Source: Obrimoposthia wandeli
Taxonomy: Eukaryota
Assembly: GCA_977020255.1 (NCBI GenBank)
Contig: CDROCS010000506.1
Location: 2,294,001-2,358,000, forward strand
Direction: 5' to 3'
Length of the DNA: 64,000 bases
Shown: one piece after another, positions 15,416-53,472 of the stretch
Position numbering within the stretch: position 1 is the stretch's first letter
Layout: each line of letters begins with the position of its first letter
Notes under the pieces: model-generated
What the model was told of the DNA's origin: nothing
Seen by the model: only the letters and a program-made list of their open reading frames with translations
The model's database searches: none
Program-made: the position numbers and the translations under genes

Positions 15416-15458
<43 letters not shown>

Positions 15459-15460
15459 TT

Positions 15461-15493
<33 letters not shown>

Positions 15494-15662: not shown

Positions 15663-15693
<31 letters not shown>

Positions 15694-22700: not shown

Positions 22701-23359
22701 ATATTGATTTTGCTAATGTTGATGAGGAAGCGTTAACTGAGCAGATCTTACAATTATTAGAACGTGAAGGTTACGATATTGCTTGGCTACCTATTTTACT
22801 TGAATTGGTGAACCAGGTACTGGATTGCCCACTACAAGATGGTTTTAGTTTACGTCAACTGGCCCCCTCACAAAAGAAAGTTGAGATGGAATTCTTTATG
22901 CCTATCTCATCGCTTAACTGTGATGATTTGAACGTATTGATAAAGCAGCATGACGGATTATCTCAGCAAGCGGGCGAGTTAGATTTTCAGCAGGTCAGCG
23001 GTATGTTAAAAGGTTTTATCGATTTGGTGTTTGTCTATGAAGGCCGCTATTACGTCCTTGATTATAAATCTAACCATTTAGGTGACAGCCAAGCTGAATA
23101 CACTGCCGATGCGATTGATCATGTCATGATTGAGCATCGCTATGAACTGCAGTATCAGTTATATACTTTGGCGTTGCATCGTTTTTTACGTTCGCGTATT
23201 CCAGATTATGATTACGAACAGCATTTTGGCGGCGTCTATTACTTATTCTTACGTGGAATGAGGGTTGAGACAGGCAATGAATATGGTGTGTTTTTTACCA
23301 AACCATCACTCGATTTTGTTATGCAGTTAGATGAATTATTTTTAGGAGAACTTGCATAA
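19763..23359 (+). CDS. recB: Exodeoxyribonuclease V beta subunit (helicase/nuclease)
   Basis: Walker A EASAGTGKT, IDEFQDTD, VTIHKSKGLE, nuclease GFIDLVF...DYKSN; TAATG coupling with recC. Confidence 0.98.
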   Translation: MADVNILNAMTFPLYGERLIEASAGTGKTFTIASLYLRLLLGHGGENAYHKDGENQLLTVEQILVVTFTEAATAELRDRIRARIHQARVAFSVGHSSDPVISLLLADIKDQDYGRCAKLLLAAERQMDEAAIYTIHGFCQRMLKQNAFESGALFESEFITDESQLKFNAIADFWRSHFYRYKDGMVDMVHSFWSSPQALLRDIAGYLSNTDIEFIAKTSSDDIAEDYDKLVDSIQQVKASWFKNVGDLCELIQAGNLNGNSYRPASVSKWLHEMLTWSQSETTQNDLPDCLVKFSQHALTTKTKKGKESPEHQVFADIELLLEKPLSLKDCFIVKAVEYVRARVMKTKNQSQLLSFDDLLSGLSDALTGDQAVSLAECIRSQYPIAMIDEFQDTDQQQYDIFNTIYGKQDGAGLFMIGDPKQAIYSFRGADIFTYMQARENVEAHYTLAKNWRSSNSMVSAVNRVFEHANKPFIYEDSISFLPVDSHGKSKPLLLNGIEPAALQLWLHEEEDQKNITKGRYQQVYAKATANQIATLLTDAQQGNAMLSGRPIKAGDIAILVRTGAEAKLVRDQLDALAIPSVYMSNRESVFASREARELYHIFAAILNPEDEGLLRAALATSIFEKPAIELDQLSNDEKVWEQTVAEFKLYQKTLQWQGFLPALRLLLNKQNIAAIMLSAQGGDRRLTDVLHLGELLQEASLELDGEYSLFRWFGEKIENPNGDAQEQLVRLESEADLVQVVTIHKSKGLEYNLVFLPFICATRQASTPLYHQDGHTYVHLDLDDAEKLEAAKEQADEERLAEDLRLLYVALTRGVYATWLGLGAVKMGNSHNKMHLNAMGYLLQQGEECKDTEFKTCVEKLAEQSVDELRSCVAIVEPPLAAVPAYQPVAEPVVTYQAKTMTNPISKNWWVTSYSALSRHRSSGNAGNSHSSYDASLELPGFDAEVNTEKDEEQEMSWDIFSFPRGAAAGTLLHTVFEHIDFANVDEEALTEQILQLLEREGYDIAWLPILLELVNQVLDCPLQDGFSLRQLAPSQKKVEMEFFMPISSLNCDDLNVLIKQHDGLSQQAGELDFQQVSGMLKGFIDLVFVYEGRYYVLDYKSNHLGDSQAEYTADAIDHVMIEHRYELQYQLYTLALHRFLRSRIPDYDYEQHFGGVYYLFLRGMRVETGNEYGVFFTKPSLDFVMQLDELFLGELA

Positions 23360-37663: not shown

Positions 37664-38009
37664 AGAATAGTAGACGCTGTGTGTTATAAAAATAGTGACG
37701 CACAGTGATACTTCTAATCCATCCTATTTATGTTCGCCTCGATCAATATTTATATTATTTATTTTTATTCTCCTCAAATAAAGCAATTCAAGTGCTTAAA
37801 AGCCTCTTTTATCTCATTACCCCTTTCTGATGTTATCGCTTACTAGCGTATATGATATTTGCATCTATTATTTGATCTAATATGCTGGATTGTCGTTGAA
37901 TTGCGATATATAAAATCAACATTGATGATTAACTAGCGTTATACATCTTATATTAGAGTGTTTTTCATTTAATTATGTTCGGGTGCACTCGTTACAATTA
38001 AGGTCATCT

Positions 38010-40787: not shown

Positions 40788-40836
40788 ATCAAGGACGTTA
40801 GCACGATAGAAAGGATGTTAAGTAGATAGGCCAATT

Positions 40837-43800
40837 ATGAATAACCGCCGTTCGAGTGAAGTAACGAACAACAAAAAATCGCGAGTTAAGGTGCTAACGC
40901 TAGTGCCGCTCGCTGTACTTTTGATGTCTGCATTATCTACGCTGTGGTTAATAACACCAACGAAAGAAGTACTGCTTACATTAATTTCTCGCTCAACTTC
41001 GCCGAAGATATCGTTATCATTTTTAAATGTGTTATTAGTTCGAGACCCTAACAATCGTCATATTAAACTGCTCATAGCAAAAAACATCTATCAAACGGGT
41101 GATATCCGTCGTGTCATTGAATTTGTAGAACCTTTGCTTAACGATGCCAACAATAATCAAGATTGGCGAGCTTACTCCTTATATTTAGAAGCCGTGGTCG
41201 AAGGGGGTTATGCGAGAGATGCTAGTTTAAATAGCTATTCAAATCAAAAATTAGACTTATTGTTTAAGAATATCAAACATATTCCGGATGCCAAAGTCGC
41301 GCGTCGATTTGCAGATGTAGCCTTGTCGCTTAACATGCCTGCTCAAGCGTTGAATATATTAAGGCCTCATATAGCAAGTCTTGAGACAAGTTATGAAGAA
41401 CTTATCTCTTTGGCGTTGCAAGTATCCGATTACGACACTGCTTTGACGTTGTTATCTGCTAGTTCAGGGTTATCTTATGATGATACAGGTGTGATAAGAG
41501 GTGCGCATGTTAATACTCAATACAATAAAGGCATAGCTGATAAATTAGCTCGTATACATCAAATATATCGTTGGCAGGGGAGCACGACCAAGGCTCTTGA
41601 AATTAGTTTGTTGCTTGCGGCGCATGAGCCAACGGAGCAAGTATTGCGGGATGGGCTTTCTGAAGCGAAAGCGTTAGGCGATATTTACCATGAGGGGCTT
41701 TTTTATAACCAATTAGCGGTCCGTTCTCAGTTAACTACCGCTGAATATGCACCTTGGTTAAATGCCCTCGAAAAATCTCAAGGAACAGAAGCTGCGCTAA
41801 CTACGTTGGATAAGCTACGTCAAGAAAACCCTGGTAATCGCCAGTTTATTATTGAGTTAGCGCGGCTATACAGTTATTCCAGTACTCACGAACAGGTCAT
41901 CAGTTTACACCCACAGCTTAAAGTTAATGGTCCCTTAATCGCCTCAGAAACACGAAGGTTTGCCAATGCTTACATCATGTTGAATCAACCTGATGATGCT
42001 CTGGCTGTGTTAATTGAACCAACAGATTGGTTAGATGCCGATGACGAATATTTGCAGATGGTGGCTGTATTAGCGTGGGATTTAAGCAATAAAGAAGTGG
42101 CGTTAGCCAGCCAACATGCGTTAATTAAACGTTCAGATAAGCACATAGACGTGTACCGCTATGTTCGGTTACATAGGCCTTTTAGCGAATATGATGTGCC
42201 TGAATTAGTGGCCTTATATCGTCGAACAAAAAATAAGACGTTACTGCTGGAAGCGATGAACGTGGTTGCTAACGGAGTGACTAAAAAGTTAACTTCGCCG
42301 CATGAAGTGGTTAGCAATGAGTATGGAATGGGAAAATTGCTCGATTTAGCATTACAGAACAAAACCATGAATGAGCGCGCTGATGTATATTATTATCGCG
42401 CCATGTACGCAATACAACAGAGTCGGATGCGTGACGGACACCGATTTTTTAGATTATCATTAAATGCAGAACCGTTATTTATACCGACAATCAATAGCTA
42501 TATTTGGTGGGCGATTGAGATCCAAGATCGCAATACGATGCGCGAACTTTATGATAACTATAGTTTTGTACTAAAAGATCATTCCGCATTAGGGTTAACA
42601 TTTGCAACCCTTAGCCAAGAGTTAGCTAATCATCAACATGCGCGCTATTGGTATCAAGAGTATTTATTGGTGGATGAGAAAACGGATATTACAGCGTTGA
42701 TCCACTATGCTTCACTGTTAACCGATATGAAGTTATACGAGCAAGCGAATCGATTACGTTTTTATATTGCCATCCATCATGCTTCATCGCTTGCTGAATT
42801 GCCTAATCATGCAGTATTCCAACATGCTTTGGTCGGTTTGTCGGCTGGTGATGCTGTGGCTGCCAACTTAGCGACAAAGCAAGTATTAATACAGCCGTCA
42901 GCCAGTTCGGTAGCGCAATTTTTTGAATATCAATTGATGACAGGCAATACTGATGCCACACGGTTTTGGTATCAACGGACATCATTATCACATTACGCGC
43001 TACCTAAAAGTCAGTTACTGGCGATAGAAAAGCATAATCAGGTACCTGCACAAGCTGAAGACATAACCACGAGGAGAGATTCTGCATGGATACCAGCATT
43101 ACAATATGCAGATAATGCGAATCAAATACCCTCTCAAATTTCGAGTTGGCAGGTTGAAGGTGGGTTTTATCCACAATTCACAAATTACCGATCGGCATTA
43201 CGCAGTCAATATATAGCCAATACAGCATGGGATATTAATACCGTTCGCTTAGATTATTATCAGCTTGCTAAATTTGGCAACTGGCAACTCAGTAATTATT
43301 ATCAGACCGCGGATAGCACGGGTGTCTTTGCTAGCGATAACATCGAAGATGAATTTCGATTAAGAGGATTAGCGCATTATTGGTTTAATCGAAGTGATTG
43401 GCAGTTTATGTTTGATTTTTCTGAGGGTGTTGGGGAACAGCGACTTGGTCTGAATGTTAATTACAGTACGCAGTTTAATCGACGTTGGCGGTTCGAGCTG
43501 GGAGCAGGGATAAATAATGATATTAGGGCGAGTCAAGCGCTGGCCCTTGCTGGTAGTGACAACGTGGTAAATGCGGGGGCCTTATACCAACCGAGTTACC
43601 GGACTAATGTTGAGTTTAAAGCCAAGTTTCATCAGTTATCGACCCGCTTTGATGACGAGATTGGAGATGGTTGGAGTGGTTCTCTACGTGTCACTGAACA
43701 GTTATTTTTTAATTCACCTGCTTGGCAGATATATGCGGATTATAGTATGCATGAGGTCAATTTAAGTTCTACGCCATTATTAGGTATTAACGACTGGCAC

Positions 43801-44124
43801 CAAGGTCTGACGCCGCTAACCAGCAGTGACTTTATTAGTCCACGTTATCAACGACTCGCACTTGGACAACGATTTTATCGGGGGGCGGTCGGTATATCCG
43901 ATTCGATTAAACAGTTTAATTATTTATCTCAACCTCGTTATTGGTTCGATAGCGCTGTTGGCTATGACCTTGTTACTTCACAGCCTGTGTTATTACTGGG
44001 TTTGGGACTAGGCTGGCCAATCTTTGGTCATGATGAATTGTATTTTAATGTCGATTGGCAAAGCCAAGATCGCAATGGCGAAGAAGCAGAAAAAGTGTCA
44101 ATTGGTTACTTTTATTCTTTTTAA
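40837..44124 (+). CDS. pelB: PelB: TPR-containing outer-membrane export protein
   Basis: N-terminal hydrophobic segment, long helical-repeat region, C-terminal amphipathic beta strands ending GYFYSF; position between pelA and pelC. Confidence 0.85.
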   Translation: MNNRRSSEVTNNKKSRVKVLTLVPLAVLLMSALSTLWLITPTKEVLLTLISRSTSPKISLSFLNVLLVRDPNNRHIKLLIAKNIYQTGDIRRVIEFVEPLLNDANNNQDWRAYSLYLEAVVEGGYARDASLNSYSNQKLDLLFKNIKHIPDAKVARRFADVALSLNMPAQALNILRPHIASLETSYEELISLALQVSDYDTALTLLSASSGLSYDDTGVIRGAHVNTQYNKGIADKLARIHQIYRWQGSTTKALEISLLLAAHEPTEQVLRDGLSEAKALGDIYHEGLFYNQLAVRSQLTTAEYAPWLNALEKSQGTEAALTTLDKLRQENPGNRQFIIELARLYSYSSTHEQVISLHPQLKVNGPLIASETRRFANAYIMLNQPDDALAVLIEPTDWLDADDEYLQMVAVLAWDLSNKEVALASQHALIKRSDKHIDVYRYVRLHRPFSEYDVPELVALYRRTKNKTLLLEAMNVVANGVTKKLTSPHEVVSNEYGMGKLLDLALQNKTMNERADVYYYRAMYAIQQSRMRDGHRFFRLSLNAEPLFIPTINSYIWWAIEIQDRNTMRELYDNYSFVLKDHSALGLTFATLSQELANHQHARYWYQEYLLVDEKTDITALIHYASLLTDMKLYEQANRLRFYIAIHHASSLAELPNHAVFQHALVGLSAGDAVAANLATKQVLIQPSASSVAQFFEYQLMTGNTDATRFWYQRTSLSHYALPKSQLLAIEKHNQVPAQAEDITTRRDSAWIPALQYADNANQIPSQISSWQVEGGFYPQFTNYRSALRSQYIANTAWDINTVRLDYYQLAKFGNWQLSNYYQTADSTGVFASDNIEDEFRLRGLAHYWFNRSDWQFMFDFSEGVGEQRLGLNVNYSTQFNRRWRFELGAGINNDIRASQALALAGSDNVVNAGALYQPSYRTNVEFKAKFHQLSTRFDDEIGDGWSGSLRVTEQLFFNSPAWQIYADYSMHEVNLSSTPLLGINDWHQGLTPLTSSDFISPRYQRLALGQRFYRGAVGISDSIKQFNYLSQPRYWFDSAVGYDLVTSQPVLLLGLGLGWPIFGHDELYFNVDWQSQDRNGEEAEKVSIGYFYSF

Positions 44125-44138
44125 TTAAGGAGATATAA

Positions 44139-44669
44139 ATGAAGTGGTCATTAATCTTAGTAATGCTGTTAACTTTATCGGCATGTTCTAGTCATCGTAT
44201 ACCAGATAGTCCTCCGTTAGCAGCGTCGGCAGCATGGGTTATCATGCCGTTAGAAAATAATTCAAGTACGCCTCTGGCAGCAGAAAAAGCGGAGAGAATA
44301 TTAAGTTCACAATTATATCGAAAAGGTATTAAAGCGGTTGTTTATCCGAAAGCGCCGCTTAATAGCTTAACGGATATTCTCGATCAAACAGTCAAATATA
44401 AACATGCTGAGGCATGGCTTATCACATCTCCAGCAGACTATATTATTAGCGGATCTGTTGAAGAATGGCGTTATAAAAATGGCCTCGATGCAGAACCCGC
44501 TGTTGGCGTTACATTAGAAATTAAAGACGCGAAAACGCATAAAGTAATATGGAGAGCCAGTGCCAGTCGAGTCGGTTGGGGTAGGGAAAGTGTCAGTGGT
44601 GCTGGGATTGAGGTGATCGATACGTTACTCGAGGGGATAAAAATAACTCCGTCTGGGGCGGTGAAATAA
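44139..44669 (+). CDS. pelC: PelC lipoprotein
   Basis: Lipobox LSAC, MPLENNSSTPLAAE, GSVEEWRYKNGLDAEPAVG, GWGRES. Confidence 0.92.
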   Translation: MKWSLILVMLLTLSACSSHRIPDSPPLAASAAWVIMPLENNSSTPLAAEKAERILSSQLYRKGIKAVVYPKAPLNSLTDILDQTVKYKHAEAWLITSPADYIISGSVEEWRYKNGLDAEPAVGVTLEIKDAKTHKVIWRASASRVGWGRESVSGAGIEVIDTLLEGIKITPSGAVK

Positions 44670-44686
44670 CATGATAGTGTTTATTT

Positions 44687-46024
44687 ATGGATAAATTATG
44701 GTGCGGTTTCATCAAACCTCTGCAAGGGGCGCGTTTGGCGTGGATGGAAATCATGTTTATTACTTTGATTTCTGCGGCGAGTTGGGTGTATTTTTATCCC
44801 TTTCCGCAGGGGTTAAAGGCGCATTATTTCTTTTGGCCTTTGCTGGGACCGTTACTGGTTGCTTTACGTTATGGGTTTGCTAAAGGTTTCATTTGTACAA
44901 TGTTAATGACCATCATATTTGTGTTTGTGGCAAAAGATGATGGTGTCTTGCTCTCATTCCCTTTTTCTTTGGTTGTTGGCTTGTTTTTCATGGTTATGGC
45001 CGCCGGTGAGTTTCGAGATCATTGGCAACGTCGTATTGATAAATGTGTACTCGAGCATAAACGTATGCAACAAAAATTAGCCGACTTTACTAAAAATTAT
45101 CATTTACTCAAAGTATCGCATGACCAATTAGAATTACGTCATGTCGGCAAACCTGTCAGTCTTCGTGCAGAAATAAATTCATTGCAGCAACTGGCTCTAC
45201 AGCATAGCGAACGTCGATTAATTCATATTGCCGATCCACTATTGGCCTTACTTGCACATGTCGGTGGGCTACAAGTCGCAGGTATTTATACTGTAATGAA
45301 TGATGATATCGAGCTGCAGCCTAATGCACTCATTGGCGATAAACACAAGCTTGTACTTGATGATCCAATGCTACAAGATATGTTGGAATGTAAAAAACTA
45401 CTCTCCCCGATAACCAGCCATATACCGCATCGTTCACGTTATCAATTATGTATTCCGCTGGTGGATAGTACGGGTAAACTGCAAGCTGTAGTATTAGCTG
45501 AAACAGTGAGGTTTTTTTCATTAACACCCGCGAATGTCGTTTTGCTGTCATTGATTGCTGATAATGCAGCTGATTTATTAAGTCATGATTTATTAACGCC
45601 AGTGTTGATGGAATATCAACATGATCTGTTTATCCGTTATATCTACCGCGCGCATTATAATCACCGAGAGTATGCCATGGATAGTTGCTTAATCATTTTA
45701 GATGACTGCAGTGGTCTACATCATAACGAATTACATAGCTTAATTAATTACCGCCGAGGTGGTGATGTATATTGGGTATGCGAACCACCTAATCAGCCAG
45801 CGCGGCTGATGGTTTTATTGCCACTCACCTCGATGGCAGATAGTCTGCTATACATTTCCCGAGTAAAAGAAGTCTTGTTTGAGAATTTGGGAGAACGCAG
45901 TAATGATATCGATATTTTAGGGCCTTTTTCATTTGATAAAGAGCAAGATAATATTGATGAACTCATTAAAAAATGGGGGCCTAATGATGACAATACTACT
46001 GTTTCTACTGGCGCTTTCGGCTGA
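44687..46024 (+). CDS. pelD: PelD: c-di-GMP receptor (TM, GAF, degenerate GGDEF)
   Basis: LVALRYG, GEFRDHW, LLKVSHDQLE; I-site RxxD retained as RGGD (45755-45766), followed by LMVLLPLT. Confidence 0.9.
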   Translation: MDKLWCGFIKPLQGARLAWMEIMFITLISAASWVYFYPFPQGLKAHYFFWPLLGPLLVALRYGFAKGFICTMLMTIIFVFVAKDDGVLLSFPFSLVVGLFFMVMAAGEFRDHWQRRIDKCVLEHKRMQQKLADFTKNYHLLKVSHDQLELRHVGKPVSLRAEINSLQQLALQHSERRLIHIADPLLALLAHVGGLQVAGIYTVMNDDIELQPNALIGDKHKLVLDDPMLQDMLECKKLLSPITSHIPHRSRYQLCIPLVDSTGKLQAVVLAETVRFFSLTPANVVLLSLIADNAADLLSHDLLTPVLMEYQHDLFIRYIYRAHYNHREYAMDSCLIILDDCSGLHHNELHSLINYRRGGDVYWVCEPPNQPARLMVLLPLTSMADSLLYISRVKEVLFENLGERSNDIDILGPFSFDKEQDNIDELIKKWGPNDDNTTVSTGAFG

Positions 46025-46961
46025 ATTATGGAGCTTCTACGTTTTACTCGGTGCTGATTTTTCAGCGCTAAATTGGGGGCGTTATGCCGCAATACATCTT
46101 GGTGCTTGCGGTGTATTTACTTGGCGTGCTTGGTTATTATTACCGCATGGTTATAAATTCCCAGTATGGCGTAATATTTGTTTTTTATTCAGCTTTTCAT
46201 TTTTCATTCCGCTACTTGGTATGTTTGGTGGCGGCGCTTTATTGGTTGCTTTGTATCGCCCCAAAGTCAATGTTCCTGTTACTTGGGGGGAGTGTGAACC
46301 CACTTCACTTTCCTCCTTATCAACACAATTAGATGTGAATAGTACTCAGCATTATAGTGCTGGGGCACTTCGCGATATATTAATGCATTGTCTGGATCCT
46401 GAACCTCGTTTACAGGCAGTTAATTTTGCTTGTCATTTATCACCGCAACAAGCGATACCAATTCTACAATTAGCGTTAAAGGATTTATCTGATGATGTCC
46501 GACTGTTCTCTTATGCTTCTTTGGAAGAAATGGAAGCTAAAATTAATGTATCAATTACCCAGCTTAAATCGCAATTCGTGTCTCAAAAAAAGGCCGGTAT
46601 AGCGTTCAATATTGCCGAACAGTACTGGGAGTTATGTTATCTCGGCCTCGCTGAAAGCGTGTTGTATTCACACTATCTAGAGCAAGCATCTTGGTACCTT
46701 ACTCGTGCAAATCAGATTACTGAGAGTGCCACGAGTAATTTATTACTTGGACGTATAATGCTAGCGCAGAAAAAACCAGAGCAAGCATTAGGTTACTTAA
46801 CTCGAGCATTAGATGGCGGATTATTGACTCAGCAAGTATTACCTTATCTTGCCGAAGCTAGTTTTGCATTGGGTAACTATGAGTTGACTAAATACTACAT
46901 AACGCAGTTACAAACCAGTAAACATAATCCGTTACAACAACTAAAGGAATATTGGCTATGA
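45984..46961 (+). CDS. pelE: PelE inner-membrane TPR-like protein
   Basis: N-terminal TM helices, ALKDLSDDVRLFSY, YWELCYLGLA; probable ATG 45984 (ORF track starts 45933). Confidence 0.87.
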   Translation: MMTILLFLLALSAELWSFYVLLGADFSALNWGRYAAIHLGACGVFTWRAWLLLPHGYKFPVWRNICFLFSFSFFIPLLGMFGGGALLVALYRPKVNVPVTWGECEPTSLSSLSTQLDVNSTQHYSAGALRDILMHCLDPEPRLQAVNFACHLSPQQAIPILQLALKDLSDDVRLFSYASLEEMEAKINVSITQLKSQFVSQKKAGIAFNIAEQYWELCYLGLAESVLYSHYLEQASWYLTRANQITESATSNLLLGRIMLAQKKPEQALGYLTRALDGGLLTQQVLPYLAEASFALGNYELTKYYITQLQTSKHNPLQQLKEYWL

Positions 46962-48472
46962 AGAACGATGTCGATATTTGTTTGTTGCTTGAAGGCACTT
47001 ATCCCTATGTGCGGGGGGGCGTTTCTAGTTGGATGCATCAAATTATTAAAGGTTTACCTGAATTTTCTTTTCATATCATCTTTTTGGGCAGTGAACCGAC
47101 GTTATATAGCAAGCCTGCTTATGATCTTCCTGATAATGTGGTCGGATTTGAAATACATTATTTATTACCCCTCGAGGATAATAAAATACCAACACCGACC
47201 GTTGGAGACCGCCGTTTATTTGATTCCTGGCAACGTTTTTTAACTTTTTTTAACAGTGCCAAAGAACCGATACCAAGTGAACTGCTTGGTGAGATTGTCG
47301 AATTTTTAGGAAAAAAAAATAAATTAAGTTTGACTGATTTTCTTAATAGTCGAGCTTCATGGGACGTGCTTATTGAGCATTATCAACAACAGCAAACTAA
47401 TGAGTCCTTTGTCGATTTTTTTTGGACATATCGTAATATTTATCAAGCGCTCTTTGTGTTGGCTAGTATCTCTCAATCACTGCCAAATGCGCGGGCTTAT
47501 CATAGTATTTCTACGGGTTATGCAGGATTCTTGGGGGCGTGTTGTCGACAGAAAAGTAACCGACCTTTTTTAATCACTGAGCATGGCATTTATACCAAAG
47601 AACGAAAAATAGATTTATCTCAAGTCAGTTGGATCACAGATAAACATGATTTGTTGGATGTCAGTATGCATAAAAGTATGGATGCAACTCGGCAAACTTG
47701 GACTCGGTTTTTTGAGCAATTGGGCATGTCTGCTTACCATCAGGCCGATCGTGTCGTTGCGCTTTTTGAAGGTAATCGGCAGCGGCAACATGCAGATGGA
47801 GCGACGAGTGATAAAACTCAGGTTATTGCTAATGGTATTGATATAGAACGCTTTTCATCCGCATATGAACAGCGCCTTGATATCCCCCCTATGGTTGTAG
47901 GTTTAGTCGGAAGAGTCGTGCCAATTAAAGATATCAAAACCTTTATCCGTACATTAAAAAGCGCAGTAGAAAAAATACCGACCATAGAGGGCTGGATCAT
48001 TGGGCCCGCGGAAGAAAATGAGATTTATGCGCATGAGTGTAGATTATTAATTAGCAGTTTAGGGTTGGAAGACCGAGTTAAAATGTTAGGAAGCCAAAAT
48101 GTAGCCGAAATTATGCCCAAGCTTGGCATCATGATGTTAACTTCGATCAGTGAGGCACAACCTTTGGTACTACTTGAGGCCATGGCGTCAGGGATCCCTT
48201 GTATTGCAACGGATGTCGGAGCGTGCAGTGAAATTCTTAATGGCATGGTAGGTGAGGATGCGAGTCTTGGTTCCTGCGGTATGATAATCCCAATCGCAAG
48301 CCCCACTGTCGGTGCCAAGGCCATTGTTAAATTATTCTCTGATGCTGGAATATGGCGTAAAACTGGCGATATAGGTAAGACGAGAGTCGCTAAATATTAC
48401 GATCAAGAGTTGATGTACGATGCATATCGACATTTATATAAAGGAGCGATTGATGGCGGGTATCGGCTTTGA
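46958..48472 (+). CDS. pelF: PelF GT4 glycosyltransferase
   Basis: LLEGTYPYVRGGVSSW, STGYAG, TEHGIYTKER, GRVVPIKDIKTF, LTSISEAQPL, TDVG; ATGA overlap with the pelE stop. Confidence 0.95.
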   Translation: MKNDVDICLLLEGTYPYVRGGVSSWMHQIIKGLPEFSFHIIFLGSEPTLYSKPAYDLPDNVVGFEIHYLLPLEDNKIPTPTVGDRRLFDSWQRFLTFFNSAKEPIPSELLGEIVEFLGKKNKLSLTDFLNSRASWDVLIEHYQQQQTNESFVDFFWTYRNIYQALFVLASISQSLPNARAYHSISTGYAGFLGACCRQKSNRPFLITEHGIYTKERKIDLSQVSWITDKHDLLDVSMHKSMDATRQTWTRFFEQLGMSAYHQADRVVALFEGNRQRQHADGATSDKTQVIANGIDIERFSSAYEQRLDIPPMVVGLVGRVVPIKDIKTFIRTLKSAVEKIPTIEGWIIGPAEENEIYAHECRLLISSLGLEDRVKMLGSQNVAEIMPKLGIMMLTSISEAQPLVLLEAMASGIPCIATDVGACSEILNGMVGEDASLGSCGMIIPIASPTVGAKAIVKLFSDAGIWRKTGDIGKTRVAKYYDQELMYDAYRHLYKGAIDGGYRL

Positions 48473-49823
48473 ACTCAGAAAAATATTAAAGCGTAATACG
48501 TTATTATCCATTGTTGAGGCATATGGATTAGCGGGTTTGATTAGTTCAGGCCCTTGGGTATTATCAATTTTAGCCCTGCTGGTGATTGGGATTGTTAGTT
48601 TAGGTACATTCGAGTCTTATGTGATAACTCAATTTTTGATACTCGTGACCTATTTAATGGCGGGTTCACTGATCATCAGTGGATTATTTCAATTACTGTT
48701 AACGCGTTTTATCTCTGATTTAATTTATGCGAAACAAGAACAGCGCATTGTGCCTAATCTGTTAGGTGCGATGTTCGTGACAACGGTATTATCCGCGATT
48801 TTAGCGGGGGGGATTTTGGCTATAGCGGTAGAAATAAATCCACTCACTAAAGTTATTATACTTGCTGCGTTTGTTATTCTTTGTAATCAATGGTTGGTGT
48901 TAATATTTCTGAGTGGGTTAAAAGAATATTACCGAATATTTTTTACGATCGCGGGGTGTTATGGGTTAATGGTGGTTTTATGTATCCTTGTTCCCCCATT
49001 TGGATTGACTGGATTCATGGCTATTTTTACTTTTTGCCAAGCATTGCTCACGTTCATTTTTCTCTATCATGTGATTCGACAATTTCCTGCAAAACGATTA
49101 ATTTTATTTGAATTTATTGATCATGAAAATGTATTTTTCTCGTTGTTGTTTTGTGGTTTTTTTTATAATTTAGGCGTATGGCTGGATAAATTTGTATTTT
49201 GGTCAAGAGATGAAACATCGCATCAAGTATTTAGTTTTTTACGCGCTTCTTATATCTATGACTTACCTATTTTTATTGCTTACCTTGCGATAGTCCCCGG
49301 TATGGCTGTTTTTATTATGCGCATGGAAACTGATTTTTCCCAAGCCTGCTTGAAGTTTTACAATACCGTACGTGAAGGCGGGACGTTGGATGAGATCTAC
49401 CAGCTAAAAGATAACATGGTACTTACTTGCCGGCACAGCATGTATGAAATATTTAAAGTACAGGGAATGACGTTAGTATTGTTATTGTTGTGGAGTGAGG
49501 ATATTTTACAGGCGTTGGACATTGATCTTGCCTATCTGCATTTACTTTATGTCGATCTTATTGGTGTTAGTTTACAAGTGTTAGTCATGGCCATATTAAA
49601 TATCATGTATTACCTAGATAAGCGTTATGCAGCATTAGCATTAACGTTATTTATGGCGGTGAGTAACTTTGTCTTAGCGCATATCAGCATTGAAATAGGA
49701 CCACTATTCTATGGTTATGGTTTTACGTTGACCATGTTACTGACAACGCTTATCGGCTTCATCATGTTAGATAAACAGTTTGCTGACTTAGAATACCAAA
49801 CATTTATGCTGCAGCGCTCATAA
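48453..49823 (+). CDS. pelG: PelG inner-membrane transporter
   Basis: MAGIGFELRK N-terminus, SSGPW, GVWLDKFVFW, YDLPIF, RMETDF; AAGGAG RBS before ATG 48453. Confidence 0.95.
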   Translation: MAGIGFELRKILKRNTLLSIVEAYGLAGLISSGPWVLSILALLVIGIVSLGTFESYVITQFLILVTYLMAGSLIISGLFQLLLTRFISDLIYAKQEQRIVPNLLGAMFVTTVLSAILAGGILAIAVEINPLTKVIILAAFVILCNQWLVLIFLSGLKEYYRIFFTIAGCYGLMVVLCILVPPFGLTGFMAIFTFCQALLTFIFLYHVIRQFPAKRLILFEFIDHENVFFSLLFCGFFYNLGVWLDKFVFWSRDETSHQVFSFLRASYIYDLPIFIAYLAIVPGMAVFIMRMETDFSQACLKFYNTVREGGTLDEIYQLKDNMVLTCRHSMYEIFKVQGMTLVLLLLWSEDILQALDIDLAYLHLLYVDLIGVSLQVLVMAILNIMYYLDKRYAALALTLFMAVSNFVLAHISIEIGPLFYGYGFTLTMLLTTLIGFIMLDKQFADLEYQTFMLQRS

Positions 49824-50708
49824 ACAACTCCATCGGTAGCTATCATCAAGCGCGAGAGGGAGTATTAAGGTGCTAAACTTTCTATTATTAGCATCTAAGC
49901 ATAAGGCATCGCGAGCATCTTGGTCATTAATATATATTTTCTTGTATTCAGCATTAAAAACAGGTTTTTCTGCGTCAATGAAGGGTGTTAGTAGTGCGCA
50001 TTCCTTATACTGAAAGCATTGTTCATTAACAGCGAAATCATAATGTGATACGAGATCGCTAACTTGGTCTAAATTATTTTTAAGGCCAATAGACAGGCCT
50101 TGCTTATGGGCTTCGCTGGCTAACCAGATGTTATAGTCGAGCTGATCAATGGCTGTGAAGCTAAAGCCAGGGTTGTTGGTATAACCATCGACATTGTCTG
50201 GTTCCACGCCATCACAGGCTTTATCTTTGGCGGTGATTAAGCGCGCTTTCATAATGTCTCTTACATTGTCAGAACGAACATCTATCCAACGCTCTCCTGG
50301 CCATTCATCAAGTGGATTGCCAAGATCTGATGCGGTAAATTCGTTTGCATCATCACGCCAATCTTCGTAAGTGCCTGCGGAGAAATAACAAATGACCTTT
50401 TTATTTTGCTCATGTAATGAGGTTATCTGCTGCATGTTAGTATCAAATAAATCAACATCATAAATATTAACGGAGTAACTGGTATTAATTGTTCCTTGCA
50501 GTTGCCATTGCCAAGTATCCATGACTGCGGGCTTGTACCATGGCTCGGGGCTCGGGTCTGGATTGGGAATAGGCTCCGGATCAGGATTGGGTGCTGGAAT
50601 TGGTATGTCAGGCTCCTCAGGTATCGAGGATACATTATCATCACTTGAACAACTGCCAAACCCGATAATCATTAACGCGCTTAAGGTAATTACAAGGACA
50701 TTTCTCAT
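49818..50708 (-). CDS. GH114 endo-alpha-1,4-polygalactosaminidase-like lipoprotein (Ega3-like)
   Basis: Lipobox FGSC (Cys20), Pro-rich linker, WQWQLQG, YDVDLFD, ICYFSAGTYEDWRDD, WPGERWIDVR, DGVEPDNVDGY, GLKN, AVNEQC, VFNAEY. Confidence 0.9.
   Translation of the reverse strand: MRNVLVITLSALMIIGFGSCSSDDNVSSIPEEPDIPIPAPNPDPEPIPNPDPSPEPWYKPAVMDTWQWQLQGTINTSYSVNIYDVDLFDTNMQQITSLHEQNKKVICYFSAGTYEDWRDDANEFTASDLGNPLDEWPGERWIDVRSDNVRDIMKARLITAKDKACDGVEPDNVDGYTNNPGFSFTAIDQLDYNIWLASEAHKQGLSIGLKNNLDQVSDLVSHYDFAVNEQCFQYKECALLTPFIDAEKPVFNAEYKKIYINDQDARDALCLDANNRKFSTLILPLALDDSYRWSCL
50541..50621 (-). repeat. Pro-X low-complexity linker (PEEPDIPIPAPNPDPEPIPNPDPSPEP)
   Basis: Residues 30-56 of the GH114 ORF; imperfect PNPDP duplication. 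Confidence 0.9.
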
Positions 50709-50710
50709 CG

Positions 50711-53245
50711 TTATTTATCCGCTTGATCAACAGTAAAGGTACGACCATTATGATCAACATCGGTAGTAATAAGGCGTTGCCCGCCATAAAATATACCGCC
50801 AGTTATACCCGTTGCTCTTGCTTTAATCGCATCGTCGGCAAATAACGTCACGCTATTGTTATTCCGGTTCCAGGTACCGCGTAGATTAGCTGACTTGGCT
50901 GCTAATTTTTCTTCGGTCATTACCCCGATAGTATAATAATCTAAGTTAATAATTGGCAGGGTCAGTAATTGATTGAAATAATCGGTGACTGCATGCAGCC
51001 AATCGTATTGCAAGGTAAGTCCGTTACCATAATTATGTAAGTTACTAATATGGAAATAGTGTGGCGAAGGACTAAAAGTCAGCATATGCCTAAAGGTAGT
51101 TTCTGCTTCAGCGGCTAATATGCCATTATAATTACGTGGCTGGCAGATAGCACCAGCAATATGACAAGGATTATCTCCAGCCTCAATGTGACGTTCATAA
51201 AATATATAGTTGTACTCGTCGGTTAATTCCTCTGGTGTGGTGACATTATAAAATAAAGAGGTGGGATAACGCGGCAGTAATAAAATATTAGTGTCTGGCA
51301 CATAAGAAGGAATATTTTGGTTTGGACGTGATATATCAGAGGCCATATAACGAATACCTAGTGTGGCCATACTTTCAAATAATTCGGTATTCCGGCCCTC
51401 CGGATAATCAACAAAGATGGACGATGCTTCGTTGGAACTTTCGGAATCTTCTAAGCCAGAATGATTACCCGTTACTAAAACTTGAGATGCATTGGTAAAC
51501 CCTGGAAGGTTCAGACGGAGCCAAAGGATTAGGTTATCACTTATTTCTTGGAAGGCTATATCATAAGTTGCACCTGAACTTTTATACATATCCCGATGGC
51601 TGAAAGTATGATTTAAAAATCGGAAATTATTTTTATATTTGGTTATTGTATCGGTAAGTGGTTCTTGGCTCGTATATCGAATGATTAAACGTGGGCGTCT
51701 GAGTTCTCGGCCGGTTTCAGTACTATAAATTTGAATGGCTTGGTCTGCGTCTGCCATGATCATAAGACCCGCTTTAGGAATATTAGTTTGTTGCCATTGA
51801 TTTACTAGTGATGTGATGTTGGCTTTGATGCGGTTTTTAGCAATTGTGTAGCTTATACAACTTGAAGGATCAAAATCACCACCTTTATTTATCCAACTTC
51901 TTTGTACACTATTGTGTGTCCAGTTGGCTTGATCTTCCCATTTTTGTTGTATTAAGCATATACGTCCTGTACCTGTCACTACTTCACCACGCGCGACTTT
52001 TACTCTCAATTTTAAAACTGCTTTCGAAGATAGGTTGTGAACATTGTCTGGTAATTCAAAAGTAACGAGTGCTCGCGCTTGCTGTGTACTTGAATTATTT
52101 ATATTCAGTACTTTACTTTCAGCATAACTACTACTTTGTCTTGCTGAACTAATGTAAGTATCAGAGATGGATTCTAATATCACTTTCGCTGGCGTGTTTA
52201 CTGAAGCGCCAGCACCGTTAAATACCATATCTAGTTTAAAGTTAGTTAAATTTGAATATGTCGAATTAAATTGATTGTTCGCTGCGACGATATTCTCTAT
52301 ATCATTTGCGGTGTTGCGGTAAATTTTATAATCGTTAGTTATATTTTTTAGTGGATCCCAAATTTCGTCGGCAAGATAGAGATCATCAATGTGTGCTGCG
52401 AGATAAACTTGGCGGGAACCAATAAATACACCTTGTGTGGCAAAGTTTAAAAATTCGTAATTTAATAACTGTGAATAAATCAAATACCAAGCATTGGTGA
52501 TACTTGAAAATAGTACTTCGCGACCGTCGTTATAGATTAATTTTGATACCATTATTTTACCCGATGCTTTGTCAGTAAGCAGTGGTGTAACGACCGGCCC
52601 ATTTGGATCTAGACTCGGTGTTGTGATTATGGTGTAGTCAGTGATAGGGAGGGTATTGGCTTTATTTACATATTCAAAGATGTCATTGTTGTTAATGGGT
52701 AACTGCCAGACGCCGGTATAAGAAAACCCCGCGACCAACGAATTCATATCCATCCCATAGTCTAGATCGTAAGTGACTCGGAAATATTCACCTGACATCG
52801 GATACCCAGATAATACCGATTCTCGGACTTTAAAATCACGCTCATAAGCATGTAATCGCTTCCATTCTTCTAGTGTGAATGCAGAGCCGTTAACGTTACC
52901 GTTGCCCAAATAATACAGCGAACTGTCGGTTAAAATTATACCGTTGTAATTACCTTGGTCATTTGTCACTAACACATCATCTGTGAGTTCGGTTTGTGTC
53001 GCGTCTAAAACATCATAAGGAACGCCCATTTCATCGAGCATATCATCGATTAAATCTAAACCTTGATCTTGCTCTGCAGTACCAGTAGTGATCACTAAAA
53101 CTTTTAAGTCCACGATAGGTGTACTACTTGCTGATAAAGGTAATAACAATAAGATCGGCAGAATAAATAACCAAGGTGGTGTTTTTAATATGCGCGCGAC
53201 TTTACTGGATGCTTTATTGAGTAACATACTGTGACTCCAATACAT
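50711..53245 (-). CDS. Secreted Agd3 (CE18)-like carbohydrate deacetylase with inserted DNRLRE-like domain
   Basis: Signal-peptide-like WLFILPILLLLPLSAS; GVPYDVL and YNGIIL N-domain; YLAAHIDDLYL (HIDD at 52382-52393), FLNHTFSH (HTFSH at 51596-51610), LLPRYPTSLFYN, PHYFHISNL. Family recognised from motif order, not from a search; true start may be ATG 53227. Confidence 0.78.
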   Translation of the reverse strand: MYWSHSMLLNKASSKVARILKTPPWLFILPILLLLPLSASSTPIVDLKVLVITTGTAEQDQGLDLIDDMLDEMGVPYDVLDATQTELTDDVLVTNDQGNYNGIILTDSSLYYLGNGNVNGSAFTLEEWKRLHAYERDFKVRESVLSGYPMSGEYFRVTYDLDYGMDMNSLVAGFSYTGVWQLPINNNDIFEYVNKANTLPITDYTIITTPSLDPNGPVVTPLLTDKASGKIMVSKLIYNDGREVLFSSITNAWYLIYSQLLNYEFLNFATQGVFIGSRQVYLAAHIDDLYLADEIWDPLKNITNDYKIYRNTANDIENIVAANNQFNSTYSNLTNFKLDMVFNGAGASVNTPAKVILESISDTYISSARQSSSYAESKVLNINNSSTQQARALVTFELPDNVHNLSSKAVLKLRVKVARGEVVTGTGRICLIQQKWEDQANWTHNSVQRSWINKGGDFDPSSCISYTIAKNRIKANITSLVNQWQQTNIPKAGLMIMADADQAIQIYSTETGRELRRPRLIIRYTSQEPLTDTITKYKNNFRFLNHTFSHRDMYKSSGATYDIAFQEISDNLILWLRLNLPGFTNASQVLVTGNHSGLEDSESSNEASSIFVDYPEGRNTELFESMATLGIRYMASDISRPNQNIPSYVPDTNILLLPRYPTSLFYNVTTPEELTDEYNYIFYERHIEAGDNPCHIAGAICQPRNYNGILAAEAETTFRHMLTFSPSPHYFHISNLHNYGNGLTLQYDWLHAVTDYFNQLLTLPIINLDYYTIGVMTEEKLAAKSANLRGTWNRNNNSVTLFADDAIKARATGITGGIFYGGQRLITTDVDHNGRTFTVDQADK

Positions 53246-53436
53246 GTTTAAATGATGATATTAAATAGACGTTATCCGCTGATACCTTGTGAATACGTGT
53301 TGACGCATGATTGGGATAGCGCTTGTAATAACATTTTAAAGTGTAGACATTAAATCTAGCAGTGTAAAATACTGCATAGTGTCTTTTAACGTGATAGATA
53401 ACTGGTATAGACTTATCTTTTAAAATTAGCTACATT

Positions 53437-53456
53437 AACTGTTTATTCATACAGTT
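53437..53456. promoter_or_regulatory. LexA (SOS) box upstream of topB
   Basis: AA-CTGT-TTATTCAT-ACAG-TT: exact CTGT-N8-ACAG with palindromic flanks; the core ends 18 bp before the topB ATG and TATAAT lies at 53457-53462. Confidence 0.8.
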
Positions 53457-53472
53457 TATAATTGCTAACATC

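What the first reader, a model, noticed from the sequence alone, without database searches (positions are those of the whole stretch)
50711..53245. Bacterial Agd3 (CE18)-like deacetylase with apparently intact metal-binding motifs
Seen, in the order I recall for Agd3: HIDD (aa 285-288), HTFSH (aa 546-550), PRYP (aa 658-661), HYFHISNL (aa 729-736), after an N-terminal GVPYDV/YNGII domain and a Sec-type signal. These are CE4-like Asp-His-His metal-triad motifs in the CE18 layout. Inference: an active secreted alpha-1,4-GalNAc deacetylase, a family mostly studied in fungi, probably horizontally acquired by this lineage.
Basis: partly seen in the sequence, partly recalled or inferred. Interest (0 to 1): 0.8.

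Follow-up and report, generated by a model that had tools for sequence, protein, structure and literature searches.

The report
Agd3-type deacetylase beside pel operon
This gene encodes a bacterial relative of the fungal biofilm enzyme Agd3 with every catalytic residue intact. It sits next to a complete Pel biofilm-sugar operon, an arrangement already reported for this bacterial group in 2020. The one less familiar feature is an extra sugar-binding domain inserted inside the catalytic domain.

Summary
ORF 50711-53245(-) exists and every motif sits at the stated residue.

**Family.** It is a CE18/Agd3-family protein:
- Pfam finds Agd3_CE and CBM87.
- The only PDB sequence hit is Agd3 (profile E 1.5e-29).
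- An AlphaFold model (pLDDT 89) superposes on Agd3 at Z 32.9 over 560 residues.
- All four catalytic motifs map residue by residue onto the Agd3 residues shown essential by mutagenesis.

- There is no sign of recent acquisition from fungi. GC and GC3 match the neighbours, Moritella relatives share the synteny, the tree follows bacterial taxonomy, and identity to fungal Agd3 is only 16-21%.
- The gene lies 2 nt upstream of a GH114 (Ega3-like) lipoprotein gene, tail to tail with a complete pelABCDEFG operon. The PelA there keeps its own deacetylase motifs, so this is a second Pel-type deacetylase.
- A 178-residue CBM96/DNRLRE domain is nested between CM1 and CM2. Relatives carry 0, 1 or 2 copies at that site.

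**Prior knowledge.** Bamford et al. 2020 already reported bacterial Agd3 homologues, naming Moritella, with GH114 partners and nearby Pel genes. NCBI already names the orthologue. The scan's own first readers also noted the pel/GAG hybrid, the insert and the GH114 gene on this window.

**Verdict.** A sound but largely known finding. It is a new member of a known kind with a modestly novel nested domain. Enzyme activity and substrate are untested.

The parts
50711..53245 (-). Agd3-like (CE18) deacetylase ORF, 844 codons. The likely true start is Met7 at nt 53227, giving 838 aa.
53123..53245 (-). N-terminal Sec-type signal peptide (aa 1-41). Cleavage is predicted by eye near S40/S41.
   Evidence: Sequence read directly; pLDDT below 50 for residues 1-41; homology to relatives begins at about aa 45.
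52421..53113 (-). CBM87-type alpha/beta/alpha domain (aa 45-275), which holds the GVPYDV and YNGII motifs. It is strongly acidic (net charge -20, pI 4.1).
   Evidence: Pfam PF25116 E 3e-14; superposes on the Agd3 N-terminal domain; charge
52199..52420 (-). First part of the CE18 catalytic domain (aa 276-349), with CM1: H285, D287 (catalytic base) and D288 (metal ligand).
   Evidence: Aligned to Agd3 D377/D378; invariant in 53 homologues
51665..52198 (-). Nested CBM96/DNRLRE-type beta-sandwich domain (aa 350-527), inserted as a clean cassette at the site of Agd3's beta2-insertion, between CM1 and CM2.
   Evidence: NCBIfam NF033679 E 7.4e-14 at aa 362-522; sub-threshold Pfam Disaggr_repeat; structural matches 8WAB Z 20.4 and 7VBO (CBM96) Z 17.4 over model residues 350-525; insert boundaries from alignment A2
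50891..51664 (-). Second part of the CE18 catalytic domain (aa 528-785): CM2 H546/H550 (metal ligands), CM3 R659 (in PRYP), CM4 H732 (catalytic acid; Y730 stands where Agd3 has M666).
   Evidence: Pfam PF25115 covering aa 536-774; residue-level alignment to Agd3 H510/H514, R613 and H668; conservation
50714..50890 (-). C-terminal beta-rich domain (aa 786-844), as in Agd3.
   Evidence: The model is all-beta here, and the superposition on 6NWZ reaches model residue 844 / Agd3 residue 805.
49818..50708 (-). GH114 (Ega3-like) endo-alpha-1,4-galactosaminidase homologue. It is a lipoprotein with a Pro-rich stalk. Its start lies 2 nt after the deacetylase stop, so the two are probably co-transcribed.
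   Evidence: Pfam PF03537 E 4.9e-89; Ega3 6OJ1 E 2.7e-60; junction sequence; one metatranscriptome contig spans the junction
37983..49823 (+). Complete pelABCDEFG operon, convergent with the pair. The stop codons of pelG and GH114 overlap tail to tail by 6 nt. PelA retains its CE21 deacetylase motifs.
   Evidence: Pfam hits for PelB barrel, PelD, PelF and PelG; PelA vs PtPelA 9CGY E 8e-164 with HxDxD, HTFSH and YYHxYSG conserved; PelC and PelE assigned by position and by tblastn matches in the syntenic pel clusters of related genomes, having no Pfam or NCBIfam family hit; overlap
53246..53472 (.). 227-bp intergenic region shared with the divergent topB gene; presumed promoter region of the agd3L-GH114 pair.
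   Evidence: One -35/-10-like site on the minus strand at 53368-53340, but the region's site count is no higher than in shuffled sequence. Inference only.

Best explanation
The gene encodes a Sec-exported, metal-dependent polysaccharide de-N-acetylase of family CE18, the Agd3 family. Its layout is CBM87, then the CE18 (beta/alpha)7 catalytic domain, then a C-terminal beta domain, with a CBM96/DNRLRE module nested in the loop after strand beta2. By homology, D288, H546 and H550 hold a divalent cation. D287, positioned by R659, activates the metal-bound water. H732 protonates the leaving amine, releasing acetate from GalNAc. The most likely substrate is the cell's own Pel polymer (alpha-1,4-GalNAc/GalN), made by the adjacent pelABCDEFG operon. 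PelA here keeps its own CE21 deacetylase motifs, so this enzyme would be a second deacetylase that raises or re-patterns the GalN content. Its translationally adjacent partner, a GH114 Ega3-like lipoprotein, would then cut the GalN-rich stretches so produced (deacetylate, then trim or release). Shown here: family membership, intact catalytic residues, fold, domain layout, gene linkage and conservation of that linkage. Inferred: activity, substrate, cellular location beyond the inner membrane, and the order of action with GH114.
For: Family and fold:
- Pfam Agd3_CE and CBM87.
- Agd3 is the only PDB sequence hit (profile E 1.5e-29).
- AF2 model with pLDDT 89.2 and pTM 0.81.
- Foldseek top hit 6NWZ, E 3.8e-32.
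- VIA-align Z 32.9, rmsd 2.6 A over 560 residues, spanning model 42-844 and Agd3 142-805.

Catalytic residues:
- D287/D288, H546/H550, R659 and H732 align with Agd3 D377/D378, H510/H514, R613 and H668. Each of these is essential in Agd3 by mutagenesis (PMC7229062).
- All are invariant in 53 homologues except H550, which is kept in 44 of 53 and is present here.
- Conserved Cys pairs 430/463 and 694/701, plus the signal peptide, fit an extracytoplasmic protein.

Context:
- A full pel operon is adjacent.
- Pel is partially de-N-acetylated alpha-1,4-GalNAc (PMC12022489).
- Fungal Agd3 de-N-acetylates re-N-acetylated Pel, and Ega3 cleaves native Pel (PMC9135694).
- The GH114 partner matches Ega3 at E 2.7e-60.

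Linkage to pel genes recurs in:
- Moritella, with the same synteny (L081).
- An insert-free close relative, where pelA-G, agd3L and GH114 are co-oriented (L080).
- Vibrio sinensis (two tandem agd3L-pel units), V. mytili and a Hahellaceae MAG.
- Nitrosomonadaceae and Methylococcales.

Other support:
- The acidic CBM87 and CE domains (pI 4.1-4.9) suit a polycationic product.
- Short metatranscriptome contigs at 95-100% identity cover both genes, and one crosses their junction.
Against: - No activity, substrate or localisation data exist for any bacterial CE18 in the literature I could search.
- PelA here looks fully competent, so a second deacetylase is not obviously needed.
- The three Colwelliaceae orthologues are orphan genes with no polysaccharide genes within 10 kb. 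About half of the insert-free homologues also lack pel or GH114 neighbours.
- The pair is convergent with pel rather than in the operon, so co-regulation is unproven.
- The nested domain's nearest structural relatives bind anionic polymers (chondroitin sulfate, alginate) rather than GalNAc/GalN chains. Its net charge varies from +8 to -8 among orthologues.
- Tyr replaces Agd3 M666, whose Ala mutant is inactive. Tyr or Phe is, however, the bacterial norm.
- The RNA-library contigs may derive from contaminating DNA.
Confidence: 0.7

Rival explanations
1. The Agd3-like/GH114 pair does not mature the cell's own Pel. It is a matrix-degrading or dispersal module: it deacetylates and then cleaves GalNAc-rich matrices, either the cell's own biofilm at dispersal or Pel/GAG-type matrices of competing bacteria and fungi, perhaps for nutrition.
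For: - The pair is a separate convergent transcription unit, not part of pelA-G.
- Ega3-type enzymes disrupt Pel and GAG biofilms (PMC9135694).
- Orphan orthologues exist in Colwelliaceae without pel genes.
- The GH114 is a lipoprotein on a long Pro-rich stalk, a plausible surface display.
- The extra CBM is typical of degradative enzymes (PMC9971899).
Against: - Pel linkage recurs in many lineages. In L080, V. sinensis and the Hahellaceae MAG the gene is co-oriented with, or directly abuts, pel genes.
- No transporter or GalN-catabolic genes lie next to the pair.
- Fungal Agd3 and Ega3 belong to the biosynthetic cluster.
Confidence: 0.17
2. The enzyme de-N-acetylates a different polymer, for example a chondroitin-like or other GalNAc/GlcNAc-containing capsule or glycan, and its position next to pel is coincidental or reflects only shared regulation.
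For: - The nested domain is structurally closest to a chondroitin-sulfate-binding CBM (8WAB, Z 20.4) and to the alginate-binding CBM96.
- The whole CE18 fold also resembles the heparan N-deacetylase domain of NDST1 (Z 25), showing that the fold serves other substrates.
- Many homologues have no pel neighbours.
Against: - The GH114 partner is very close to Ega3, an alpha-1,4-galactosaminidase.
- Pel linkage recurs independently on both main branches of the tree.
- The close relative without the nested CBM keeps the same pel and GH114 linkage, so the CBM does not define the substrate.
Confidence: 0.08
3. One reading: the gene was acquired recently by horizontal transfer, by implication from fungi, where the family is best known.
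For: - The family was first characterised in Aspergillus.
- The published tree suggests some ancient inter-kingdom transfer.
- The partner GH114 is unusually similar to fungal Ega3 (E 2.7e-60).
Against: - Gene GC 0.387 and GC3 0.329 lie within the range of the flanking genes.
- Synteny with topB and pel is conserved in other Moritella.
- The window's protein groups with Moritella (support 100), inside a Moritella/Colwelliaceae/Vibrio clade (support 100), within a wide bacterial radiation.
- 217 bacterial homologues were found.
- Identity to fungal Agd3 is only 16-21%.
- The authors of the family paper argue for transfer from bacteria to fungi.
Confidence: 0.03
4. The protein is a catalytically dead, lectin-like derivative that binds but does not modify the polymer.
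For: A subset of homologues, mainly actinobacterial, has lost the second metal-binding His (9 of 53). This shows that such drift happens in the family.
Against: The window's protein keeps all six key residues (DDHHRH), as do 69 of 74 genome-derived homologues.
Confidence: 0.02

Closest known systems
Aspergillus fumigatus Agd3 (CE18 + CBM87; PDB 6NWZ; PMC7229062)
   Same: - Same three-domain architecture and fold (Z 32.9, rmsd 2.6 A over 560 residues).
- The same four catalytic motifs, with all mutagenesis-validated residues conserved.
- Encoded next to a GH114 (Ega3-type) gene and near the synthase genes of an alpha-1,4-GalNAc polymer.
   Different: - Only 16-21% identical.
- Agd3 has a 64-residue helical beta2-insertion between CM1 and CM2. 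This protein has a 178-residue CBM96/DNRLRE beta-sandwich at that site, giving a CM1-CM2 spacing of 258 against about 132 in Agd3 (D378 to H510, residue numbers).
- Tyr stands where Agd3 has M666.
- Bacterial Sec signal; no N-glycans expected.
- The partner polymer system is Pel rather than GAG.
Bacterial 'Agd3-related carbohydrate deacetylase' homologues reported by Bamford et al. 2020 and so named by NCBI (e.g. Moritella yayanosii, 69% identical)
   Same: Direct orthologues. The paper names Moritella among the Gram-negative genera carrying homologues. It also notes the consistent GH114 co-occurrence and the proximity of some Gram-negative copies to Pel genes.
   Different: Nothing essential differs. 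In the text I could read, the paper does not mention the nested DNRLRE/CBM96 domain. It also does not mention that the accompanying PelA keeps an intact deacetylase. None of these bacterial proteins has been characterised.
PelA deacetylase domain (CE21; PtPelA 9CGY; PMC12022489) and B. cereus PelA_DA (CE26; PMC13254593)
   Same: These are metal-dependent de-N-acetylases of alpha-1,4-GalNAc in Pel systems, with related (beta/alpha)7 CE folds and MT1/MT2/MT5-type motifs. PelA_DA has a three-domain layout reminiscent of Agd3.
   Different: They belong to different CAZy families. PelA lacks the CM3 arginine and uses a His instead. The structural match of this model to 9CGY is weak (Z 12.7, rmsd 10 A). 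In this locus PelA is present as well, so the CE18 enzyme is additional and does not replace it.
CBM96 / DNRLRE domain (7VBO alginate-binding CBM, PMC9971899; 8WAB chondroitin-sulfate-binding CBM)
   Same: The nested domain (aa 350-527) matches NF033679 and shares the fold (Z 17.4 and 20.4).
   Different: Sequence identity is 15-19%. The known members are terminal modules of lyases that bind anionic polymers. Here the module is inserted inside a deacetylase catalytic domain, and its ligand is unknown.
Human NDST1 N-deacetylase domain (8CCY, 9F6Z)
   Same: Second-best structural match, spanning both the CBM87-like and CE domains (Z 22-25). The similarity between CE18 and heparosan N-deacetylases is already noted in the literature.
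   Different: 11-17% identity. NDST1 carries a fused sulfotransferase, acts on heparosan and is a eukaryotic Golgi enzyme.

Membership tests
CE18 (Agd3 family) | CM1: adjacent Asp-Asp (catalytic base plus metal ligand), Agd3 D377/D378 | tested here: met
   D287/D288 align with the Agd3 'IDD' and are invariant in 53 of 53 homologues.
CE18 (Agd3 family) | CM2: HxxxH metal ligands, Agd3 H510/H514 | tested here: met
   H546/H550 in HTFSH align with Agd3 HTFTH. H546 is invariant; H550 is kept in 44 of 53 homologues and is present here.
CE18 (Agd3 family) | CM3: late Arg that positions the catalytic base, Agd3 R613 | tested here: met
   In the profile alignment, PRYP aligns with Agd3 PRW, so R659 corresponds to chain residue 491, which is R613. 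It is invariant in 53 of 53.
CE18 (Agd3 family) | CM4: catalytic-acid His, Agd3 H668, preceded by a conserved hydrophobic residue (M666) | tested here: met
   H732 aligns with H668 and is invariant. The M666 position is Tyr here (Tyr in 35 and Phe in 18 of 53), so the His is met and the Met is replaced by an aromatic residue.
CE18 (Agd3 family) | Three-domain fold: CBM87, (beta/alpha)7 CE domain, C-terminal beta domain | tested here: met
   VIA-align Z 32.9 over 560 residues spanning model 42-844 and Agd3 142-805. Both Pfam models score above their cut-offs.
CE18 (Agd3 family) | Metal-dependent de-N-acetylation of alpha-1,4-GalNAc chains | not testable with these tools
   Needs an enzyme assay. 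Only genomic context (pel operon, GH114 partner) supports it.
CBM87 | Match to the Agd3 N-terminal alpha/beta/alpha module with its conserved aromatic residues (Agd3 W292, W334) | tested here: inconclusive
   The domain-level match is met (PF25116 E 3e-14; structural superposition). The aromatic positions were not resolved: the sequence alignment places T202 opposite W292, with Y204 two residues away.
CBM96 / DNRLRE domain | Match to the NF033679 / PF24517 profile and the beta-sandwich fold | tested here: met
   NF033679 E 7.4e-14, 52 bits against a cut-off of 34. Fold matches to 7VBO at Z 17.4 and 8WAB at Z 20.4. Pfam CBM96 itself did not score on this protein, only the related Disaggr_repeat below threshold, although it does score on homologues. 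The ligand was not tested.
Pel system accessory enzyme (working role, not a formal family) | Conserved physical linkage to pelA-G genes across lineages | tested here: met
   Linkage is seen in Moritella, Vibrio, a Hahellaceae MAG, L080, and subsets of Nitrosomonadaceae and Methylococcales. It is absent in Colwelliaceae and in many Nitrosospira copies, so the linkage is frequent but not universal.
Pel system accessory enzyme (working role, not a formal family) | Co-expression with pel genes and an effect on Pel | not testable with these tools
   The only data are fragmentary metatranscriptome contigs over the pair.

The most novel reading that the evidence does not exclude
Marine gammaproteobacteria such as this Moritella-like organism may run a two-stage Pel modification. 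PelA (CE21) would lay down the basal GalN-GalNAc pattern in the periplasm. The CE18 enzyme would then create longer GalN runs, and only these would make the polymer a good substrate for the tethered GH114. The translationally adjacent pair would thus act as a 'deacetylate-then-cut' switch controlling release or dispersal of Pel. In this reading, the CBM96 cassette nested at the beta2-insertion site (0, 1 or 2 copies in natural variants) sets where and how processively the enzyme acts. It would be the first case described of a CBM inserted inside a CE18 catalytic domain as a tunable specificity element.
Probability: 0.2. Interest if true: 0.55.

Novelty: new member of a known kind. Interest (0 to 1): 0.3.

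Why it matters
No bacterial CE18 enzyme has been characterised. The family is known only through fungal Agd3, a virulence and biofilm factor. This locus places a CE18 deacetylase and an Ega3-like hydrolase beside a complete pel operon that has its own competent PelA. That makes it a clean system for asking why a Pel producer needs a second deacetylase/hydrolase pair. It also bears on how the fungal GAG and bacterial Pel machineries are related.

Natural variants with and without the nested CBM96 module, at about 66% identity and with the same pel/GH114 linkage, offer a ready-made comparison for the role of that domain.

The basic facts were published in 2020: bacterial and Moritella Agd3 homologues, GH114 partners and Pel proximity. 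The finding therefore refines that work rather than overturning it.

Tried and rejected
- **Does the CE18 enzyme replace a decayed PelA deacetylase?** Rejected. The window's PelA aligns end to end with PtPelA (E 8e-164) and keeps the HxDxD, HTFSH and YYHxYSG motifs.
- **Recent HGT or a compositional island?** Rejected. GC and GC3 match the neighbours, synteny is conserved in Moritella, and the tree follows taxonomy locally.
- **Does the nested domain's charge hint at its ligand?** Uninformative. Net charge ranges from +8 to -8 among orthologues.
- **Promoter and terminator scan of 49600-53500.** No enrichment over shuffled sequence, and no terminator between the convergent pelG and GH114.
- **Search of the Bamford 2020 supplements for Moritella or DNRLRE.** Nothing was found in the files held as text. 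I therefore could not confirm whether a Moritella locus is one of the five drawn in their Fig. 8c.
- **Expression.** Only short Logan contigs from four metatranscriptomes map, at 95-100% identity. This is too thin to prove transcription and may come from contaminating DNA.
- **Rooting the tree with fungal sequences.** The tree is midpoint-rooted, so it says nothing about the direction of any inter-kingdom transfer.
- **Sensitive counting of GH114 neighbours.** The iterated search was partly confounded by the GH114-like N-terminal domain of PelA and by an ORF-length cut. The co-occurrence fractions are therefore approximate.
Full report
**1. Observation**

The minus-strand ORF 50711..53245 (844 codons) is real.

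The N-terminus has a basic stretch, a 13-residue hydrophobic core and a small-residue S-A-S-S site. This is a Sec-type signal by inspection. In the structure model residues 1-41 are disordered.

Met7 is the likelier start. It has a GGAG 9 nt upstream, Met1 has none, and the 98%-identical database protein P0001 has 838 residues.

**2. What it is**

Sequence evidence:
- Pfam finds Agd3_CE (PF25115, E 4.5e-16) and CBM87_Agd3 (PF25116, E 3e-14), both above their curated cut-offs.
- Against all PDB sequences the only hit is A. fumigatus Agd3 (6NWZ). It scores E 6.7e-13 with the single sequence and 1.5e-29 with a 53-sequence profile.

These alignments map the catalytic residues one to one:

| This protein | Agd3 | Motif and role |
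|---|---|---|
| D287 | D377 | CM1, catalytic base |
| D288 | D378 | CM1, metal ligand |
| H546, H550 | H510, H514 | CM2, metal ligands |
| R659 | R613 | CM3, positions the base |
| H732 | H668 | CM4, catalytic acid |

All of these Agd3 residues were shown essential by mutagenesis (PMC7229062). In my alignment of 53 homologues all are invariant except H550, which is lost in 9, mostly actinobacterial, sequences but kept here. Among 74 genome-derived homologues, 69 have the full DDHHRH set. Tyr or Phe stands where Agd3 has M666.

Structural evidence:
- An AlphaFold2 model built on the alignment is confident (mean pLDDT 89.2, pTM 0.81).
- Foldseek ranks 6NWZ first (E 3.8e-32).
- VIA-align gives Z 32.9 and rmsd 2.6 A over 560 residues, spanning model 42-844 against Agd3 142-805. 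That covers all three Agd3 domains.
- Next come the deacetylase halves of human NDST1 (Z 22-25). This similarity is already noted in the literature.
- PtPelA is a poor match (Z 12.7, rmsd 10 A).

**3. The nested domain**

CM1 and CM2 are 258 residues apart here. They are about 132 apart in Agd3 (D378 to H510), where a 64-residue helical 'beta2-insertion' caps the active site.

The extra sequence (aa 350-527) is a discrete beta-sandwich:
- NCBIfam DNRLRE_dom scores E 7.4e-14 at 362-522.
- Pfam Disaggr_repeat scores below threshold.
- Structural matches are a chondroitin-sulfate-binding CBM (8WAB, Z 20.4) and the alginate-binding CBM96 founder (7VBO, Z 17.4), over model residues 350-525.
- DNRLRE domains are the sequence family to which CBM96 belongs (PMC9971899).

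Across the family the CM1-CM2 spacing falls into classes: about 81-101 residues (no insert), 241-298 (one module), about 320, and about 448 (two modules). NCBIfam and Pfam confirm two DNRLRE/CBM96 stretches in the long class.

A close relative, P0010 (662 aa, 66% identical), lacks the module entirely. The alignment shows a clean cassette boundary, running from '...FNGxGA' straight to '...LTD/K...'. The module is therefore a labile, dispensable add-on at a fixed loop. Its ligand is unknown, and its net charge varies from +8 (here) to -8 among orthologues.

**4. Context**

- **Partner gene.** Two nucleotides after the stop codon begins a 296-residue lipoprotein with a Pro-rich stalk and a GH114 domain (Pfam E 4.9e-89). 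It matches fungal Ega3 (6OJ1) at E 2.7e-60.
- **pel operon.** The pair is convergent with a complete pelABCDEFG operon at 37983-49823. Pfam hits support PelA (GH114-like N-terminal domain), PelB, PelD, PelF and PelG. PelC and PelE have no family hit. I assign them by position and by their tblastn matches in the syntenic pel clusters of related genomes. The pelG and GH114 stop codons overlap tail to tail by 6 nt, and there is no terminator between them.
- **PelA is intact.** It aligns over its full length with P. thermotolerans PelA (E 8e-164) and keeps the CE21 motifs (HxDxD, HTFSH, YYHxYSG). The CE18 enzyme is therefore a second deacetylase and not a replacement.
- **Other flank.** The divergent neighbours are topB and msrPQ-like genes.

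**5. Relatives**

The big protein database returns 217 homologues. The closest named ones are Moritella ('Agd3-related carbohydrate deacetylase', 69%), then Vibrio sinensis and Pseudocolwellia. More distant ones come from Acidimicrobiia, Nitrosomonadaceae and Thiocystis.

Seventy-nine loci from species-representative genomes were fetched. In a tree built with the insert columns removed, the window's protein groups with Moritella (support 100). That group lies inside a Moritella/Colwelliaceae/Vibrio clade (support 100), then other Gammaproteobacteria. Insert-bearing forms also occur in two actinobacterial clades. Nitrosomonadaceae, Methylococcales and Chromatiales carry insert-free forms.

Gene neighbourhoods:
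- Moritella PE36, a Moritella MAG and Logan contig L081 share the window's arrangement.
- L080 has pelA-G, insert-free agd3L and GH114, all co-oriented.
- V. sinensis has two tandem agd3L-pel units.
- V. mytili and a Hahellaceae MAG have agd3L abutting pelA.
- Subsets of Nitrosomonadaceae and Methylococcales are pel-linked.
- Actinobacterial copies sit with GH114 and a PelF-like glycosyltransferase.
- The three Colwelliaceae copies and many Nitrosospira copies are orphans.
- Among loci with at least 8 kb on both sides, 11 of 13 insert-bearing and 11 of 24 insert-free copies have a pel-type or GH114 gene within 10 kb. These counts are approximate.

**6. Mechanism proposed**

By homology with Agd3, the enzyme would work as a metal-dependent acid/base de-N-acetylase acting on alpha-1,4-GalNAc chains. 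The CBM87 would extend the binding groove.

Pel is exactly such a polymer. Fungal Agd3 de-N-acetylates re-N-acetylated Pel, and Ega3 cuts native Pel at GalN sites (PMC9135694). The acidic CBM87 and CE domains (pI 4.1-4.9) suit a polycationic product. The conserved Cys pairs and the signal peptide suit an extracytoplasmic location.

I therefore propose a second-stage Pel deacetylase whose product is the preferred substrate of the co-encoded GH114. The fold, residues and linkage are shown. Activity, substrate, location and order of action are inferred.

Weak expression evidence: short contigs from four environmental metatranscriptomes match both genes at 95-100% identity. One spans the gene junction (50677-50918). 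DNA carry-over cannot be excluded.

**7.

This is not supported:
- GC (0.387) and GC3 (0.329) are within the range of the neighbours.
- Synteny is shared within Moritella.
- The local tree follows taxonomy.
- Identity to the fungal enzyme is 16-21%.

The family paper found separate bacterial and fungal clades and argued for transfer of the cluster from bacteria into fungi. My tree is midpoint-rooted and has no fungal sequences, so it does not address direction. The GH114 partner is far closer to its fungal counterpart than the deacetylase is. I did not follow up this asymmetry.

**8. Novelty**

Bamford et al. 2020 (PMC7229062) already reported several of these points:
- Agd3 homologues in 45 bacterial species, naming Moritella.
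- Conservation of the four motifs and of the three-domain layout.
- Consistent co-occurrence with GH114 genes.
- Proximity of some Gram-negative copies to Pel genes.

NCBI and UniRef already use the name 'Agd3-related carbohydrate deacetylase', or 'DNRLRE domain-containing protein', for orthologues.

I found no paper that characterises a bacterial CE18 enzyme or discusses the nested CBM96 module.

The scan's own first readers had separately noted the pel/GAG hybrid, the insert and the GH114 on this same window. I had reached the same points independently, before that look-up.

**Verdict.** This is a correct call of a known family in a genus where it was already reported. It comes with a modestly new architectural variant and a useful natural comparison with and without the insert.

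Noticed in passing
window 1-16080 (+): Three tandem rRNA operons explain the high GC (0.46-0.50), the strong GC skew and the absence of long ORFs here. The first 16S is cut by the window start. The tRNAs differ between units: Ile-GAT plus Ala-TGC in the first spacer, Asp-GTC after the first 5S, and Glu-TTC in the second spacer.
   Followed up: partly
window 49818-49823: pelG (+) and the GH114 gene (-) end tail to tail with a 6-nt overlap. Each stop codon lies opposite the last sense codon of the other gene, and no terminator-like hairpin lies between them. Convergent transcripts must overlap, which could cause transcriptional interference or antisense effects.
   Followed up: partly
L080:1-12868 (GCA_052426985.1 contig JBNOXG014710246.1): A close relative (about 66% identical) lacks the nested CBM96 domain. 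It sits co-oriented directly after pelA-G and before a GH114 gene. This is a natural minus-insert variant with the same linkage but inverted orientation relative to the window.
   Followed up: partly
L003 and L010 (Vibrio sinensis BEI233 scaffold_0, about 52-90 kb): Two paralogous agd3-like genes lie 15.5 kb apart, each followed by pel genes. The arrangement looks like a tandem duplication of an agd3L-pelA..G unit.
   Followed up: no
alignment A1: P0062, P0065, P0067, P0069, P0073, P0075, P0078, P0098, P0113; loci L014, L015, L017, L020, L039: In these, mainly Acidimicrobiia/actinobacterial, homologues the second metal-binding His of CM2 is replaced by Ala or Ser, while all other catalytic residues are kept. 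They may have altered metal coordination or have lost activity.
   Followed up: no
window 49818-50708 (-): The GH114 lipoprotein matches fungal Ega3 far more strongly (E 2.7e-60, 207 bits over about 231 residues) than the deacetylase matches fungal Agd3 (16-21% identity). The two genes of the pair may have different inter-kingdom histories.
   Followed up: no
model m21e1da281577, residues 45-785: The second-best structural match is the N-deacetylase half of human heparan sulfate NDST1 (Z 22-25), covering both the CBM87-like and CE domains. This link is already mentioned in the literature.
   Followed up: no
window 16371-25386 (+): Three large consecutive ORFs (1130, 1198 and 675 aa) lie directly after the rRNA operons. 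They were not examined.
   Followed up: no
L004, L005, L006 (Colwelliaceae): Orthologues that carry the nested domain are orphan genes here, with no polysaccharide genes within 10 kb. In L004 the topB neighbour is still present, which suggests the pel/GH114 block was lost or was never inserted there.
   Followed up: partly
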